DNA of 57,808 nt from Bigelowiella natans CCMP2755 (Eukaryota > Protista > Cercozoa), in NCBI GenBank assembly GCA_000320545.1, contig ADNK01002057.1, positions 1-57,808 on the forward strand, written 5' to 3'. Positions 9,401 to 15,824 of the stretch are shown one piece after another. The first letter of the stretch is position 1. Every line of letters begins with the position of its first letter. A program made the translations under genes and the position numbers. The notes below the pieces were generated by a model. It saw only the letters and a program-made list of their open reading frames with translations, made no database searches and had not been told where the DNA came from.

Positions 9401-12198
9401 CAAGCTCCTGAGAGGCTCTTCTTGTCGGGAATGACCGATGCTGTTTAGGTTGGTCACCAGCTCCTTCAACTGCTTCAGGCCTACGCATGTCTTGCCTTCC
9501 ATCGCCTCGTTTGCGCGCATGAGAAGTCCATCCAGCTTGTTAAGGAATCCTTGTGCGTGGGTTACCTTGGGGATGTGAAGTAGCCAGAGAGGATTCATCG
9601 TCCTTTTCTTCTTCTTCTTCTTGTTCTTCTTATTCATCTTCTCTTCCACCTTCATCATTGTGCCTTCTGCTGCTGGCTTGGCTTTTAGAATCTTGGGAGC
9701 GGGGCGCTTGAATTCGGGCTGTTCTTTTTTCACCACCTTCCTGACTACTGCTGGGGATTCTTCTCCCTCTTCATCTTTATTCTGCTCCTTTTTTACCATG
9801 GCACCATCATCCTCACCACCACCACCACCACTACCAACATCGATACTGTCATCCTCATCGTCGCCGTCTCCTTCACTGGAAAGGTACCTAGTCCCATAGT
9901 CAACCATGAGTCGCCTCAGCTGAACAAGACTCTTCTTTCGCTCCTTTTGCTCCCTTTCCTTGTAGTTCTTGCTCTCCAAAGACTTCAAGGTTCTGTTAAG
10001 TTTCGTCCTGAAGTCCTTCCCAACTTTCACGATATTCAGCAGCCCTGCCAAGGGATCCCTCCCCGGAGATAACCGGATATCAGATAACTGTGACTGCTGC
10101 TGGAACAGCTGCTGCGCTTTGCTTAAAGAGATCGAATGCTCCAAAATCTCCCTCCCCTCCCCACCGTCTTGGTCATTTTTAACGATGACGCCACCCACCG
10201 ACAACAGGTTGGATTCAGCAAAGAAGGTTCTTACTTGCGCTTCCCATCCCTCACTCTTCTTCACTATCTGTAAAAGCTGATTTTCGGCCTCAAAATGAAC
10301 TCGCAGGCTCTTTAGCTCTTCAAGCAATGCAAGTATCTTGGACACCGTAGTTTTCTTGTTTGAGTACAATCTCTTCGCCCTTCTTTCCAGTCCCTGTGCC
10401 CTCAATATCCTTTGTTGGAGCTTCTTAACCAGTTTTTCCTTGATAGGCGGGTTAGATTTGCACGCATCTTCGACAAGCTCTTCCAGTTCTGGGAGCCATG
10501 GGCCCCGGCGGCCTTTGTTGGTCGCCTTTTGATAAAGAGTTTGGTATTTCTCAAGCCATTTGAAGGACTCTAGCTCTCGGCGTAAGGATTCCATCTGTGG
10601 GGTCTGTAGCTTCAGCCCGGTACCCTGAGCTAGTAAGTTCATGATCTTGCGTTTCGTCTGCAAGGCTTTTGACCCGTCCCCGTCTCCTCGAACAAACATG
10701 TCGACCTCCTTAGCAAATTTGCTCGCTTGTTCCACGTTATGTTCCATGTCGTTCTTGGCATTGACATTGATGAAACTAGCTCGAGTATCTAGCTGCCGCA
10801 GCCATGCTTGAGCATCATGGAGTCGTAGCGGGGTGTTTGCGCGCGATGAGACTCTCGAGTGACCCCTTTTGCGGCTCTTGGAAAAGTCAAAGCTTGAATT
10901 GAATGTAGTAACAAGCTGAACAGCATCTCTGAGTTGCGAAACCTCCGGGACGACGACTTGAGGGAATTCGTTTTTCGCTGCATTCAACCTTCGCCTGGCC
11001 TCTGTTAGAGAAATGACCTTTGTCGTCCCATTTAATATGGGCTCTATGTCATCGATCCATTGTCTGCAGACATCTCGCAATTCTTTGAGTTCTTTGTACT
11101 CCTCCAGCTCGAGTAAAGGTAGCATTGTATCGGCTTTATGCACTAACTCTTCAACTTGCCGAAATGTTCCACCTCCTTGGTGGCCTAGAATCTTGAGTGC
11201 ATTTTTCTTCCATATGTCAGCGCGAGATTTCAGCTCCTTTATAAAGTTTATCGAACCCAGCCTGGACTTATTTCCCCGAGCTAATTCATCTTTGTAGTCT
11301 TGGATGAGGTTGTCGAGCTCTTCTACGTCGCGTCTGGACCCAAGTTCCTTCTTTGCCTACAAACAAAAGGGACGACATGCATCTTAGAACAACATGGATA
11401 TCGATTAGAGTCTAGTCTTGCTATTGCTGTTATTCTTGTGACCCTATCGTGGAGCTTTTGTACAGCCTTTCTCACAAATTTCCTCCGTTTTTCTTCATAG
11501 TTTTGCCTCTTGCAAGCAGCGTCCAACTGTTGATTAATAATGGAAGCCTTGGCCCTGTAACAGCAAGTGACAGGATTTTAGTAGCTGTTTCAAACGCTCA
11601 TCCAAAAATAATCAACTTTGGAATATCATAATCGCATTTCTTGAGTGTGGCCAGCGTAGCATCAGGATATTGCTTGCATCCATCTGGAAGTTGCTTTGAC
11701 ACATCCTTTGAAAACGAAAGATACTCTTCGACCTGTGTTGAAGAGGGGGAGCTATATTAGGCCTCGAGAATGCCATAAATTCTAAACTTAAAGAACACAT
11801 ACTGCTTTACAATCAGTCCGATCGGGATCCCAGACTTGCTGGCACATTATAGTGCGCCTAAGGGAGATCTGAGTAGCGAAAATAATGATTCAGGCAAAAA
11901 ATAATGATAAGGAATAATCTTTCCACCTTCCTCAAATCTACGTCGTCTTTATCCCAATCACAATCTAGCTTGCGAGCCATTCCCTTCACTTTTTCTATGT
12001 GACTTGCGGTAGGCATCTCCAAGAGCACCTTCGTCTTAATCTCACACTAGAACCGGTGCAAAACACAAAATGAATACACACACAAATCAAGATGATAGGA
12101 AGATTGACCTGGAATTTCTGACCAGCAGTGTCAACTCGTGACTCCCGTGGAGGGAACCGGCTAGCGACTTCATCTAAGTGGGGAAGATAATGTATCAT
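3468..12198 (-). CDS. Large chromatin protein: ELM2-like N-terminus, PLU-1-like helical region, two PHD fingers, HMG box, poly-Q/H/P C-terminus (KDM5-related, no JmjC seen)
   Basis: Short 5' exons give MIHYLP...ESRVDTAGQKFQ...QVWDPDRTDCKA|VEEYL...ATLATLKKCDYDIPKA (ELM2-like). One very large exon starts at 11356. PHD1 is CYCQ..MMECESCQEWFHPIC..FYCPSC (~7995-8150). PHD2 is YCLCQ..MIGCDECDEWYHPKC..FQCPKC (~6335-6480). The HMG box is PYKCFVAEF..GEMWRQL..KGPYYELAKEDKVRF (~5615-5835). The frame shifts inside a (GGGA)n tract at ~4257-4300 and continues open to the stop at 3468. Confidence 0.8.
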
Positions 12199-12886
12199 TC
12201 TGAGACGTAAGGAAATGTGATGATAACTTACATGTGAAGTCCTCGGCGCGGTTGTTACCAGACTGGAGTGGAGAGGCAGAGGAGGTGTTTTTCACCATCC
12301 TTTCACTTGGCTGCCTCCCGCGCGGCTGAGTAAAACGTGGAGCTCAACGCTAAATGCTGAGCAACAGCGTGTGCCCGCCTAGTTGCCTTGAGAGTGTCTT
12401 TGCCAGGTGTAAGTAGCGAGCTGTTCCTTGTTGTTGTAATGGCTGTTTTGAAACATGACCTGAAAAATAGGAAGTATTGTGGTTATTTATTCACAAATAC
12501 ATATCTGTAGAACTCGCGGCATATTCGAAATGAGAGGGAGGAAAATTAATGTGCCTAAATTATCCAATTATTGTCAGTGAACTGATCCGTAATTTTTAGA
12601 TCTACTTCCGATTATTTCTCGGATTCCTGTGCTTCGCGCGCTTCGCTTTGGATCACGAGGCGAATATCTAGGAAATCCAGGAAATCTCGAGATATTCTGA
12701 CTCTACAAACACAACCAATGGTGTGACTAATTTCCAAACAGGGGTAGTTTTGTGTGGAAGACTTGATATTTGATCCATATTTCAATGAAAATCTCTGGTA
12801 GAATTCCTGTCCAACTAACCTAGTTGGGCTGTGTTTGTACATTTAAAAAAGACAAGCACCCCGAAGTCGAAGCCAAGGGGGAGGGG

Positions 12887-14293
12887 ATGATCCGGCAATT
12901 TGTGCGAGCGGGCAGTAATGCCGTCTTGTCGAGGACTAGTATAACGAGGCCACTGGGCTCACTGTCATCCAATGATGGGAAGCCGGTTACGCCAGATTTC
13001 AATACTACAGTGAATGTGGCTGACATTCGCCTTTCGAAGCCAAAACCCAAGAGCAACACCACATCACAGAATACAGGCACGTGGGAGGGTCTGAAAGGCT
13101 TGGAGGAAAGAACAAAGGGTAGCCTAATCGATGCGACTCTAAAGGAAATGGAGGACGATGATGACTTTCAGCTGACAGCAGAAAGATTGAAGACTCTCGG
13201 TCAAAAAAAGATGACACAGGAAGAACGGAAGAACCGCCGTCGTGCATTGGACAACTTGGGAGTCCCCGATTTCTACGCGTTTCTCGAAAAAGAAAAGGTG
13301 GCTAACGAGCTTAAAAGATCCCCTTCAGAGATACTTCAGCTCAACATCGGGCTTTACTGCAACCAAGCATGCAGCCACTGCCATGTTGAGTCCTCCCCCA
13401 AGAGAAGTGAGATGATGGACCGCAAAACATCCGAAAGGTGTCTCACTATTTTGAAAAACAGTCCTTCTATCCACACGTTGGACATTACGGGCGGTGCCCC
13501 AGAGCTTAATTCTGAGTTTAGATATCTGGTTACTGAGGCCCGCAAGATCCCTCACGTTAAGGAAATAATCGACCGATGTAACTTGACTATTCTCACTGAG
13601 CCGGGCCAGGAAGACCTAGCCGAGTTTCTTGCTGAAAATGAAGTTAAAGTTGTTGCTTCGCTTCCATGCTACAGTGCTAAAAATGTGAACCAACAGCGCG
13701 GCAAAGGGGTATTTGACCGTTCGATTCAAGCTCTTCGTACATTAAACTCATTCGGCTATGGGAAACAGCACGGTGGTGGCCTCACGCTTGATTTGGTGTA
13801 CAATCCGCTGGGAGCCTTTCTGCCCCCCCCACAAGATGCTCTCGAGGAGAAGTACAAAGAGGAGCTGATGCAAACGTTCGGCATCGAATTCAACAACCTG
13901 TACACGATTACAAACATGCCTATAAAACGCTTCGCCGACTTTCTGTTTCGACGCAACGAACTCCAAGAATATATGAATCTGTTAGTTAACAACTTCAATC
14001 CAGGCACCGTCACAGGATTAATGTGCACAAACACCCTCAATGTTTCATGGGATGGCACCGTGTACGATTGTGACTTCAATCAACAGCTAGCACTGGGTGC
14101 CGGCAGCTACGTTCCTGAAGGAATGGAGGGCAAAGGATTATATGCTAAATCAGGAGGAGAGGATGGGAAAGGTGTGTCTGTGTTTGATTTTGAGTCCGCC
14201 CTTGAGCTTGTAGATACGGAGATAGTAGTGGACAGCCATTGCTTTGGTTGTACTGCTGGTATGGGTTCCAGCTGACAAGGAGCGACCGCATAG
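12887..14293 (+). CDS. arsS: Radical SAM/Cys-rich (DUF3641) ArsS-family arsenosugar biosynthesis protein, predicted selenoprotein (TGA 14273-14275 = Sec), with N-terminal transit peptide
   Basis: LQLNIGLYCNQACSHCHVESSP (CxxxCxxC at 13358-13381), LDITGGAPELN, IDRCNLTIL, ASLPCY, VNQQRGKGVF, LDLVYNP, TNMPIKRF, LMC, YDCDFNQQL and C-terminal HCFGCTAGMGSS-TGA-QGATA-TAG. Intronless. First ATG is at 12887 (MIRQFVRAGSNAVLSRTSITRPL). Confidence 0.9.
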
Positions 14294-14562
14294 ATGTTAT
14301 TGATATGTGGTCATCGTCCATTGCTTATCCCCATCCTCTTTTCCTTATGCCACTTAGAGTTACATGTGCCTAGTATGTTGGAGGAGGCGTGTAAAGCCCA
14401 AACGTGATTTGAAACGTGACTCGTATTTGTTTGCTATCGCGTTGATTTCTCCCTTCCCCAGCCTTTGTGCATGAGATTTTTCGTTCGTTCCATTATTCTA
14501 TGTTGACCGAATGAGGAAAGGGAAACTAGAGAAATAAGAAGCAAGATTCCTTAGTGAATTCT

Positions 14563-14667
14563 AACCATTATATTTACGCGGGTGACGCTAAGCGCTTCGA
14601 AATCTATCTTTGGAACAGAGTCTTCCAAGGACGAAGTGTTTAGTTGAGTGCGATAATCCTAATGGTT
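14563..14667 (+). promoter_or_regulatory. Eukaryotic type II SECIS element in the arsS 3' UTR
   Basis: Helix I is AACCATTA/TAATGGTT plus CGCG/TGCG. The core is GTGAC (14582-14586) opposite TGAG (14645-14648). Helix II is GCTAAGCGCTTCG/CGAAGTGTTTAGT, 13 bp fully paired with G-U. Unpaired AAA at 14600-14602. Apical mini-helix TCTTTGGAA/TTCCAAGGA. Confidence 0.9.
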
Positions 14668-14845
14668 TTCCAAGTAGATTTGATTAAATTGAAATGTCTT
14701 CATACTCCTCGCATGCGCTTTTACTTATGCGCTGAAATAAGCTAACGTCACTGACATATTGCGCACGCTTTGCTGTCATCTGCAGTGTATTGAAAAAGTA
14801 GTATATATTGTGTACAAGCAAGACGACAGCAGGCACTAGGGCGCC

Positions 14846-15133
14846 CTGGAGCTCAAGGGGGGCTCGGGTTTGCGGACACAGCAATCGCAGGCGCCCTGCG
14901 GCCCTGCCGAGCGCCGCCGGCCGAAGCTGACTTGCGGAAATGGCTTCTCTTGGCGCGTTGCGCTATTTCCGCATTTCACCAAGCCAAAACACAGCATTTT
15001 TCTGAAATTCAGTGAAATCTGCAATGGAAACTTGCAAACATCACTGCAACCACCCGAAAATTTTTCGCGATCCGCGCGGAAAAAACACCCCTTTAGCCGC
15101 AAAACCCTCATTTCCGCCCCCCTTGATCTCTAG
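14846..15133. mobile_element. Non-autonomous DNA transposon (MITE-like) relic
   Basis: Terminal inverted repeats CTGGAGCTCAAGGGGGGC and GCCCCCCTTGATCTCTAG match at 16/18. Subterminal GGGTTTGCGG/CCGCAAAACCC. Internal inverted repeat TGCGGAAATGGC/GCTATTTCCGCA. No TSD found. Confidence 0.6.
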
Positions 15134-15824
15134 ATTACCCACTAGCTAGATGATGTGCACATCACATTGCGTTGCTAATGAGGCCAACACTCAATGACTT
15201 TTATTTCTGCTGCTGCTGCTGCTGCTATGGCTTTTGGTCTACTCGCGTACAAAATATCAATGCGACGGCATGCTTGCGTAGTGGTTCAACCAGCTTACAT
15301 GGCATTGCGAGGCGACGCCGCCTTCATAAAAAGCTGGCTATTGGCGTGTAGGATGGATTCCTTACACGTTGGGTGATGACGGAGTACGCAATGCAATCAC
15401 GAACTTGTCACATTTCCCACGCGTAATACGAGTGGCAAACTTTGGTGACTCTAGGACTGCGCACATAGCCTTGACCTAAGGCACGGGAGCGAAAGAGCTA
15501 AATGAAGATGTGTACGACCTTTACAGTCCTGTAAAACACGGCTAGTTCTTATTGGGATAAAACAATGCGACATCGCGCACATGCAGAAAATTACAAAAGC
15601 TGCTGTGGCTGTGCACGCAAATTTGCCAATTACCTCCATCTCAAGATAATTTTGTGTAGCACTAGTAAGTACTTGCGCGTTGTTATTTGTATGTTGTAAC
15701 AATTTCATAGCAAGCATTTGAGCTAACTCTAGAACTCGTTCCCTTTCTACAAGTACAGATCGGATATAGAAATACAGCTAATTGTGTAACTCTGTCACTT
15801 GACCCTTGCTTTCAGGGATATTCA

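What the first reader, a model, noticed from the sequence alone, without database searches (positions are those of the whole stretch)
14200..14667. Eukaryotic ArsS-family radical SAM enzyme is a selenoprotein: in-frame UGA at the conserved Cys plus a SECIS
Seen: the ORF stops at HCFGCTAGMGSS-TGA, but five more codons (Q G A T A) follow before a TAG. About 310 nt downstream is a canonical eukaryotic SECIS: GUGA/UGA core, 13-bp stem, AAA and an apical mini-helix. Established: bacterial ArsS/DUF3641 proteins end in a C-x-G-C-T-A-G-x-G-S-S-C-x-G motif, and some bacterial members carry Sec. ArsS adenosylates methylated arsenic in arsenosugar synthesis. Inference: the true protein is 468 aa ending GSSUQGATA, and automated annotation would truncate it. 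It would link selenium to algal arsenosugar chemistry, using a eukaryotic 3'-UTR SECIS in place of the bacterial in-frame type.
Basis: partly seen in the sequence, partly recalled or inferred. Interest (0 to 1): 0.9.

Follow-up and report, generated by a model that had tools for sequence, protein, structure and literature searches.

The report
Algal ArsS selenoprotein gene with SECIS
The marine alga Bigelowiella natans has one expressed gene for the arsenic-sugar enzyme ArsS, and its apparent TGA stop almost certainly encodes selenocysteine; many protists and marine animals share this feature, and public protein sets cut it off.

Summary
The window is Bigelowiella natans contig C1680. A single-exon, polyadenylated mRNA (12853-14702) carries an ORF (ATG 12887) that scores as ArsS (TIGR04167, 409 bits, cut-off 300). 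It ends ...HCFGCTAGMGSS-TGA, followed by Q-G-A-T-A and TAG.

- The TGA sits at a position that is Cys (TGC/TGT) or TGA in every homologue read, and never anything else.
- All 16 orthologue loci whose called protein stops at GSS have TGA followed by a conserved Q-G-x-T-[A/V/T] tail. Third-position changes in that tail are synonymous.
- A SECIS-type hairpin lies 307 nt downstream, inside the mRNA: GUGA/UGAG core, 13-bp helix II, AAA bulge, 9-bp apical helix. It is the only strict-pattern hit on either strand of the window, with about 0.0015 expected by chance in this UTR.
- The genome has tRNA-Sec(TCA), SelD, SepSecS and TGA-containing GPx genes. One of those GPx genes also has a GUGA-core SECIS.

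The true product is therefore 468 aa ending GSSUQGATA; the JGI model stops at GSS.

The novelty is moderate. Sec-containing ArsS is known in bacteria. An algal "Fe-S oxidoreductase" selenoprotein family is already catalogued and may be this one. The link to ArsS and the animal orthologues appear in none of the papers I could search. Other follow-ups of this scan report further B. natans selenoprotein genes on other contigs, not this one.

The parts
12853..14702 (+). Intron-less polyadenylated mRNA of the ArsS-like gene
   Evidence: Transcript contigs from 4 studies cover 12853-14702, 12859-14677 and 12870-14673. The X1 contig runs on into 24 non-templated A after 14702. No variant is seen at the TGA.
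12887..14272 (+). Coding sequence up to the Sec codon (462 codons): N-terminal extension, radical SAM core, DUF3641
   Evidence: TIGR04167 ArsS scores 409 bits against a cut-off of 300, over residues 142-462. Pfam gives Radical_SAM plus DUF3641 1-130/134. 12887 is the first ATG of the transcript.
13358..13381 (+). Radical SAM cluster motif CNQACSHC (Cys158/162/165)
   Evidence: Motif located; these Cys are invariant in 47 homologues.
14024..14071 (+). C-x9-G-x4-C motif (Cys380, Cys395), of the twitch/SPASM auxiliary-cluster type
   Evidence: Located and invariant in A3. Structural neighbours are twitch/SPASM radical SAM enzymes, Z 15-17.
14237..14272 (+). C-terminal motif H-C-F-G-C-T-A-G-M-G-S-S preceding the Sec codon
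14273..14275 (+). UGA read as selenocysteine (residue 463)
   Evidence: The codon is TGC 45, TGT 19, TGA 8 and nothing else in 72 metagenome loci. All 16 orthologue loci truncated at GSS have TGA. The six-frame TIGR04167 match runs through '1 TGA' to profile position 302/303 at 412 bits.
14276..14293 (+). Translated tail Q-G-A-T-A and the true stop TAG (14291-14293)
   Evidence: The tail Q-G-x-T-[A/V/T] is conserved with synonymous third-position changes in 17 of 17 TGA-type genes. Cys forms end CQGATA or similar.
14577..14652 (+). SECIS element, form 2: helix I, GUGA/UGAG core, 13-bp helix II, AAA bulge, 9-bp apical helix
   Evidence: Fold. It is the only strict-pattern hit in the window, with 0.0015 expected by chance, and lies inside the mRNA. 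A GUGA core also occurs in the B. natans GPx SECIS (L011).
14683..14702 (+). ATTAAA (14683-14688) and poly(A) addition site (about 14702)

Best explanation
This is the single nuclear ArsS gene of Bigelowiella natans, and it is a selenoprotein gene. The mRNA (12853-14702, no intron) is translated from ATG 12887. At UGA 14273-14275 the form-2 SECIS in the 3' UTR (14577-14652), acting through SBP2/eEFSec and tRNA-Sec, directs insertion of selenocysteine. Translation then continues through Q-G-A-T-A to UAG 14291. The product is a 468-aa enzyme ending GSSUQGATA.

Shown: gene, transcript, family membership, the Cys/UGA alignment, conservation of the tail, a SECIS-shaped hairpin inside the mRNA, and part of the Sec machinery.

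Inferred:
- Actual Se incorporation.
- That the enzyme, like cyanobacterial ArsS, adds the 5'-deoxyadenosyl radical of SAM to dimethylarsenite to make the arsenosugar precursor DDMAA.
- That Sec463 replaces the last Cys of a C-x2-C-x7-C motif in a twitch/SPASM-like C-terminal domain. There it would either ligate or flank an auxiliary Fe-S cluster, or bind the As(III) substrate.
For: Family:
- TIGR04167 scores 409 bits (cut-off 300) and 412 bits when read through the TGA.
- It is the only copy in the genome.

Sec codon:
- Of the 120 best homologues, 67 stop exactly at GSS and 51 continue C-Q-G-x-T-x.
- All 16 GSS-stop loci I could read as DNA have TGA and a conserved, synonymously varying tail. 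They include Triparma, Chrysophaeum, Branchiostoma floridae and marine metatranscriptome and metagenome contigs.
- The codon is only TGC, TGT or TGA in 72 loci.
- The Cys is invariant in 47 Cys forms.
- Bacterial TIGR04167 is a listed selenoprotein with motif GxxU.

SECIS:
- Structure, uniqueness in the window and chance expectation of 0.0015.
- The same pattern finds a GUGA-core SECIS 309 nt 3' of a TGA-containing B. natans GPx.
- Rfam SECIS_1 hits lie 3' of the amphioxus and L020 orthologues at 32.4 and 32.3 bits.

Expression:
- Poly(A) is added at 14702, downstream of the SECIS.

Machinery:
- tRNA-Sec scores 68.5 bits with anticodon TCA.
- SelD and SepSecS exons are present.
- Four GPx loci and one Sep15/SelM locus carry an in-frame TGA.

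Enzyme chemistry:
- ArsS adenosylates DMAs(III) to DDMAA (PMC13598754; bioRxiv 10.64898/2026.04.29.721666).
- The fold is closest to twitch/SPASM radical SAM enzymes, and the alignments run to the C-terminal Cys motif.
Against: - There is no direct evidence of selenium in the protein.
- Rfam SECIS models do not match the hairpin, and SECISearch3 could not be run.
- Helix I is only 4 bp, and the core is GUGA rather than AUGA.
- PSTK was not found with TIGR03575. eEFSec and SBP2 were not searched.
- My pattern found SECIS-like elements in only some of the protist orthologues, so SECIS conservation across orthologues is only partly shown.
- ArsS activity has been shown only for bacterial enzymes.
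Confidence: 0.9

Rival explanations
1. The TGA is an ordinary stop. The enzyme ends at Ser462 without the last Cys, and the downstream hairpin is a chance or unrelated UTR structure.
For: Rfam finds no SECIS here. Public gene models end at GSS. Helix I is short.
Against: All 17 of 17 TGA-type genes keep the Q-G-x-T-x tail in frame with synonymous variation and a stop at the conserved C-terminus. No homologue has TAA or TAG at this position. The Cys is invariant in Cys forms. Only 0.0015 pattern hits are expected by chance. This is the only ArsS copy.
Confidence: 0.04
2. The UGA is read through by a near-cognate tRNA (Trp, Cys or Arg) rather than by tRNA-Sec; the UGA-C context is leaky.
For: All orthologues have UGA followed by C, a context known to favour readthrough (my own knowledge).
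Against: A SECIS-type element lies in the UTR. Sec is documented at this same position in bacterial homologues. The Sec machinery and other selenoprotein genes are present. SECIS_1 hits lie 3' of the animal orthologues.
Confidence: 0.03
3. The gene is a selenoprotein, but the eukaryotic clade does not make arsenosugar precursors; it catalyses a different radical SAM reaction.
For: Eukaryotic members carry a conserved N-terminal extension of about 110 aa that is absent from the bacterial profile. The family is also present in animals not known to synthesise arsenosugars. ArsS activity has been tested only in bacteria.
Against: The score is well above the equivalog cut-off. All catalytic-domain Cys are conserved. 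An ArsM-like methyltransferase is present in the genome. Arsenosugars are typical algal products (my own knowledge).
Confidence: 0.2

Closest known systems
Bacterial ArsS / TIGR04167 'arsenosugar biosynthesis radical SAM (seleno)protein' (rSAM_SeCys; 'Radical SAM domain protein', motif GxxU)
   Same: Same domain architecture (radical SAM plus DUF3641), the same C-terminal C-x2-C-x7-[C/U] motif, and Sec at the same position.
   Different: Here Sec insertion is directed by a eukaryotic SECIS 307 nt downstream in the 3' UTR of a polyadenylated nuclear mRNA, not by a bacterial hairpin next to the UGA. The protein has an added conserved N-terminal region of about 140 aa.
Algal selenoprotein family 'Fe-S oxidoreductase' (FeSoxR): Aureococcus selenoproteome (Gobler 2011/2013) and 'The algal selenoproteomes' (PMC7539508)
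   Same: It is an algal Sec-containing Fe-S enzyme family. UniRef names several DUF3641 homologues 'Fe-S oxidoreductase', including the TGA-type pelagophyte Chrysophaeum. B. natans was reported to have 23 selenoprotein genes.
   Different: I could not see the sequences or per-species tables, so identity with this family is unproven. In prokaryotic lists 'Fe-S oxidoreductase-like' (motif UGH) is a separate family from the radical SAM one. None of these papers mentions radical SAM, DUF3641 or arsenic.
Eukaryotic selenoproteins with Sec close to the C-terminus (thioredoxin reductase GCUG, SelK, SelS, SelO)
   Same: The UGA lies a few codons before the true stop, with one SECIS in the 3' UTR, and annotation truncates the protein at the UGA.
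   Different: This is a radical SAM enzyme, not a thiol oxidoreductase. Its Sec sits in a Cys-rich motif of a twitch/SPASM-like domain.
Twitch/SPASM radical SAM enzymes (SkfB, BtrN, anSME, CteB, SuiB, MoaA)
   Same: These are the best structural matches, Z 14.6-17.1, with alignments that run to the C-terminal Cys region. The C-x9-G-x4-C motif is shared.
   Different: There is no Pfam SPASM match. The C-terminal motif is C-x2-C-x7-C/U rather than C-x2-C-x5-C-x3-C. No auxiliary cluster has been shown for ArsS in the papers I could read.

Membership tests
ArsS (TIGR04167, radical SAM + DUF3641) | Score above the curated equivalog cut-off | tested here: met
   409 bits against a cut-off of 300; 412 bits in the six-frame read-through, profile 2-302/303.
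ArsS (TIGR04167, radical SAM + DUF3641) | C-x3-C-x2-C radical SAM cluster motif | tested here: met
   CNQACSHC at residues 158-165; invariant in 47 homologues.
ArsS (TIGR04167, radical SAM + DUF3641) | DUF3641 domain ending in C-x-G-C-T-A-G-x-G-S-S-[C/U]-x-G | tested here: met
   Pfam PF12345 scores 159 bits over 1-130/134 without the tail. The Cys-form relative covers 1-134/134. Motif and tail are seen.
ArsS (TIGR04167, radical SAM + DUF3641) | Adenosylation of DMAs(III) to DDMAA | not testable with these tools
   Known only for bacterial ArsS.
ArsS (TIGR04167, radical SAM + DUF3641) | Partner arsenite methyltransferase ArsM in the genome | tested here: inconclusive
   NF008823 matches exons on C2571 (101 and 41 bits) and C2246 (85 bits). 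None passes the whole-protein cut-off, because the gene is split by introns.
Eukaryotic selenoprotein gene | In-frame UGA aligned with Cys (or Sec) of homologues | tested here: met
   the bacterial Sec motif GxxU.
Eukaryotic selenoprotein gene | Protein-level conservation downstream of the UGA | tested here: met
   17 of 17 TGA-type genes keep Q-G-x-T-[A/V/T] with synonymous codon variation.
Eukaryotic selenoprotein gene | SECIS element in the 3' UTR of the mature mRNA | tested here: met
   Core, helix II length, AAA spacing and apical helix; unique strict-pattern hit; chance expectation 0.0015; inside the poly(A) transcript. Caveat: there is no Rfam SECIS hit, and Rfam also misses the B. natans GPx SECIS elements. 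SECISearch3 was not available.
Eukaryotic selenoprotein gene | Sec machinery in the genome | tested here: met
   tRNA-Sec scores 68.5 bits with anticodon TCA; SelD; SepSecS; other genes with an in-frame TGA. PSTK was not found with TIGR03575. eEFSec and SBP2 were not searched.
Eukaryotic selenoprotein gene | Selenium actually incorporated | not testable with these tools
   Needs 75Se labelling or mass spectrometry.
Twitch/SPASM-domain radical SAM enzymes | C-terminal Cys-rich domain that binds auxiliary Fe-S cluster(s) | tested here: inconclusive
   The C-x9-G-x4-C motif and seven further invariant Cys are present. The best folds are SkfB, BlsE, anSME and BtrN at Z 15-17. There is no Pfam SPASM hit and no cluster data.

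The most novel reading that the evidence does not exclude
ArsS-like radical SAM enzymes form a widespread, largely overlooked eukaryotic selenoprotein family. It occurs in chlorarachniophytes, stramenopiles and many marine animals (sponge, amphioxus, hemichordates, bivalves, brachiopod, annelid, nemertean). Its Sec is an auxiliary Fe-S cluster ligand or a direct As(III)-binding residue. If so, marine arsenic biotransformation, including in animals, would depend on selenium.
Probability: 0.35. Interest if true: 0.8.

Novelty: new member of a known kind. Interest (0 to 1): 0.6.

Why it matters
- **Annotation.** The finding corrects a systematic error. The JGI model of this gene, and RefSeq or GenBank models in dozens of protists and invertebrates, end at GSS and so lack the invariant Cys/Sec residue and the tail.
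- **Biology.** It places a radical SAM enzyme among eukaryotic selenoproteins, which are otherwise mostly thiol oxidoreductases.
- **Testable links.** Arsenosugar synthesis in some algae, and perhaps arsenic metabolism in marine invertebrates, may be selenium-dependent. Sec may sit at an auxiliary Fe-S cluster or at the arsenic-binding site.
- **Evolution.** At least 7-11 Sec/Cys switches within the clade make it a good system for asking what Sec adds to this chemistry.

Tried and rejected
- **Rfam SECIS models on the window.** They gave no hit. I do not count this as evidence against, because Rfam also missed all four B. natans TGA-GPx loci while finding the two animal-type ArsS SECIS elements.
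- **Covariance model from orthologue SECIS elements.** I abandoned this. MAFFT misaligned the 3' halves (A1, A2), so no model was built.
- **Looser SECIS scanners.**
  - The relaxed pattern gives about 9 hits per window, too unspecific to use.
  - The constrained-fold versions missed known elements.
  - Only K-turn-like AUGA/UGAU candidates were seen in L021, L026, L028 and L030. Nothing convincing was seen in L003, L004, L019, L027, L029, L031, L032 or L055.
- **Closest TGA-type relative.** P0002 (MMETSP, 76% identity) has no contig on record, so SECIS conservation in a close relative could not be checked.
- **PSTK.** It was not found with TIGR03575.
- **Solved structures.** No relative exists beyond the generic radical SAM core.
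- **Literature.**
  - The Gobler 2011 and 2013 papers are not held.
  - The supplement of the algal selenoproteome paper has no family table.
  - Whether 'FeSoxR' is this family therefore stays open.
  - No held paper combines ArsS, arsenosugar and selenocysteine, and none describes a eukaryotic radical SAM selenoprotein.
- **Read-through product.** The Cys-form relative P0003 was folded instead.

Full report
**Source and gene.** The best protein match is the JGI Bigelowiella natans model Bigna1/55107. The genome has 3736 contigs, the same as assembly ADNK01 used in 'The algal selenoproteomes'. The window is contig C1680.

The ORF runs from ATG 12887 to codon 14270-14272 and ends HCFGCTAGMGSS. 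TGA follows at 14273-14275, then five codons (QGATA) and TAG at 14291-14293. The 462-aa part scores 409 bits on NCBIfam TIGR04167, whose cut-off is 300. That family is named 'arsenosugar biosynthesis radical SAM (seleno)protein ArsS'. The match stops five positions before the end of the profile. Pfam gives Radical_SAM plus DUF3641 1-130/134.

A six-frame search of the whole genome finds this as the only copy. That match runs through '1 TGA' to profile position 302/303 at 412 bits.

**Expression.** Contigs from four independent studies were laid on 12000-15600. They cover 12853-14702, 12859-14677 and 12870-14673 without any joint or variant. One contig continues into 24 non-templated A after 14702.

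The runs are recorded only as 'RNA?'. However, the neighbouring minus-strand gene shows two spliced joints with GT..AG ends, and the poly(A) tail is not encoded in the genome. The contigs are therefore transcripts. ATTAAA lies at 14683-14688.

**Is the TGA a Sec codon?**
- Among the 120 best homologues, 67 end exactly at GSS and 51 continue with C-Q-G-x-T-x.
- I fetched DNA for 16 loci of the GSS-stop type: Triparma laevis, Chrysophaeum taylorii, Branchiostoma floridae, and marine metatranscriptome and metagenome contigs. All 16 have TGA, then Q-G-x-T-[A/V/T], then a stop.
- The third positions in that tail vary synonymously (CAA/CAG, GGA/GGC/GGG/GGT, ACA/ACC/ACG/ACT). This is what a translated tail under purifying selection looks like.
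- In 72 metagenome loci carrying the motif, the codon is TGC 45 times, TGT 19 times and TGA 8 times, and nothing else.
- In 47 Cys-form proteins the Cys is invariant (C446 of A3).
- A 2026 review lists bacterial TIGR04167 as a selenoprotein with motif GxxU, the same G-S-S-U position.

**The SECIS.** The stretch 14577-14652 folds into the following parts:
- helix I, 4 bp;
- an internal loop with G-U-G-A opposite U-G-A-G;
- helix II, 13 bp;
- a 5' bulge beginning AAA, 14 nt after the core;
- a 9-bp apical helix.

The MFE is -29.6 kcal/mol and z = -2.8. This is the anatomy of a form-2 eukaryotic SECIS.

I defined a strict pattern: [A/G]UGA, at least 9 helix II pairs with at most one defect, AA 10-15 nt from the core, and helix I of at least 4 bp. 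It hits once on both strands of the window, at this site. In 17.3 Mb of first-order Markov sequence it hits 0.34 times per 100 kb. That gives 0.0015 expected in the 427-nt UTR, and no simulated hit had 12 or more perfect pairs.

The same pattern finds two other elements:
- a GUGA-core element 309 nt downstream of a B. natans GPx gene with an in-frame TGA (L011);
- the element downstream of the amphioxus orthologue.

Rfam SECIS_1 independently scores the amphioxus element at 32.4 bits, and the element downstream of another animal-type orthologue, L020, at 32.3 bits.

Rfam does not match the window's hairpin. It also misses all four B. natans TGA-GPx loci, so I treat that negative as uninformative. 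In the other protist orthologues I found only partial, K-turn-like candidates. SECIS conservation across orthologues is therefore only partly shown.

**Sec machinery.**
- tRNA-Sec scores 68.5 bits on Rfam, and ARAGORN calls tRNA-SeC with anticodon TCA.
- SelD exons lie on C2120 and SepSecS exons on C309/C310.
- Four GPx loci and one Sep15/SelM locus carry an in-frame TGA.
- PSTK was not found with TIGR03575.
- eEFSec and SBP2 were not searched.
- The literature reports 23 selenoprotein genes in this species (PMC7539508).

**Enzyme function and the role of Sec.** ArsS adds the 5'-deoxyadenosyl radical from SAM to dimethylarsenite, giving DDMAA, the arsenosugar precursor (PMC13598754; bioRxiv 10.64898/2026.04.29.721666). 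An ArsM-like methyltransferase is present in the genome, but only as exon-level matches.

The Cys-form alignment shows several invariant features besides the radical SAM triad: C220, C250, C368-x9-G-x4-C383 and C435-x2-C438-x7-C446.

I folded the Cys-form relative P0003 from Amorphochlora (pLDDT 78, pTM 0.82). It is closest to radical SAM enzymes that carry auxiliary clusters: SkfB, ChlB, BlsE, CteB, SuiB, anSME, MoaA and BtrN. Z is 14.6-17.1, and the aligned ranges reach the C-terminal Cys motif. Pfam gives no SPASM hit.

My inference, not shown, is that Sec463 takes the place of a Cys that ligates or flanks an auxiliary Fe-S cluster, or that it binds the thiophilic As(III) substrate.

**Distribution.** I built a FastTree of 118 eukaryote-type sequences, with the Sec/Cys columns removed and P0001, P0082 and P0112 left out. 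It needs at least 11 Sec/Cys changes, of which 7 are forced by well-supported branches.
- B. natans groups with a TGA-type MMETSP sequence and with Cys-type Amorphochlora.
- A well-supported animal clade roughly follows animal phylogeny. The GSS-stop form occurs in a sponge, amphioxus, hemichordates, bivalves, a brachiopod, an annelid and a nemertean. The Cys form occurs in echinoderms and a priapulid.
- The 'Sec' label was verified as TGA only for the loci I read as DNA. For the rest it is inferred from truncation at GSS.

**Novelty.** Sec-containing TIGR04167 is known in bacteria. Algal selenoproteome surveys list an 'Fe-S oxidoreductase' (FeSoxR) family, and UniRef gives that name to several DUF3641 homologues. 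This algal Sec form may therefore already be catalogued under another name; I could not verify this.

The 2012 survey of six invertebrates lists 40 amphioxus selenoproteins in 21 families, and no such enzyme is among them. No held paper links ArsS or arsenosugars with selenocysteine, and none describes a eukaryotic radical SAM selenoprotein.

I rate it a new member of a known kind, of moderate interest. Other follow-ups of this scan have reported further B. natans selenoprotein genes on other contigs. I used them only as context.

I submitted no read-through protein to any search or fold. The gene has no intron, so no spliced model was needed.

Noticed in passing
L005:9310-9556 (Branchiostoma floridae CM022886.1); also P0013, P0018, P0024, P0028, P0029, P0033, P0055 and many bivalve proteins: Animal orthologues of this ArsS-like gene also stop at GSS. 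In amphioxus the stop is TGA, followed by QGSTVS and an Rfam SECIS_1 match (32.4 bits) 180 nt downstream. The family is absent from the 2012 list of 40 amphioxus selenoproteins, and RefSeq calls these genes 'uncharacterized protein'.
   Followed up: partly
window 12887-13309 (residues 1-141): Eukaryotic members share a conserved N-terminal region (PDFNT..., RTxGSLI, EERKxRRRALDxLGVP) that the bacterial TIGR04167 profile lacks. In the AlphaFold model of P0003 it forms helices at residues 61-125 with good confidence. The first 25 or so residues look like a targeting peptide.
   Followed up: no
L011 (G000:C2359:78619-81957), minus strand, SECIS core at locus position 1192: A B. natans glutathione peroxidase gene with an in-frame TGA has a compact SECIS with a GUGA core, not AUGA. 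GUGA cores therefore seem to be in regular use in this species. Rfam SECIS models miss it.
   Followed up: partly
L013:294 / L016:491 (G000:C3163, about 1 kb upstream of a TGA-containing GPx): The strict SECIS pattern hits with an unusually long span (112 nt) upstream of the GPx gene. It may be a false positive or the SECIS of a neighbouring gene.
   Followed up: no
window 12000-12378, minus strand: The neighbouring gene is spliced, with two very short introns (12047-12108 and 12174-12231, 62 and 58 nt, GT..AG on the minus strand), as seen in a 4340-nt transcript contig.
   Followed up: no
window 14839-15028: Short, low-depth transcript contigs begin at 14865 with loose ends of unrelated G+C-rich sequence in two studies. 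The stretch 14820-14960 is G+C-rich and may be part of a repeated element.
   Followed up: no
G000 whole genome: The eukaryotic PSTK model TIGR03575 found nothing, although tRNA-Sec, SelD and SepSecS are present. The gene may be divergent, split by introns, or missing from the assembly.
   Followed up: no
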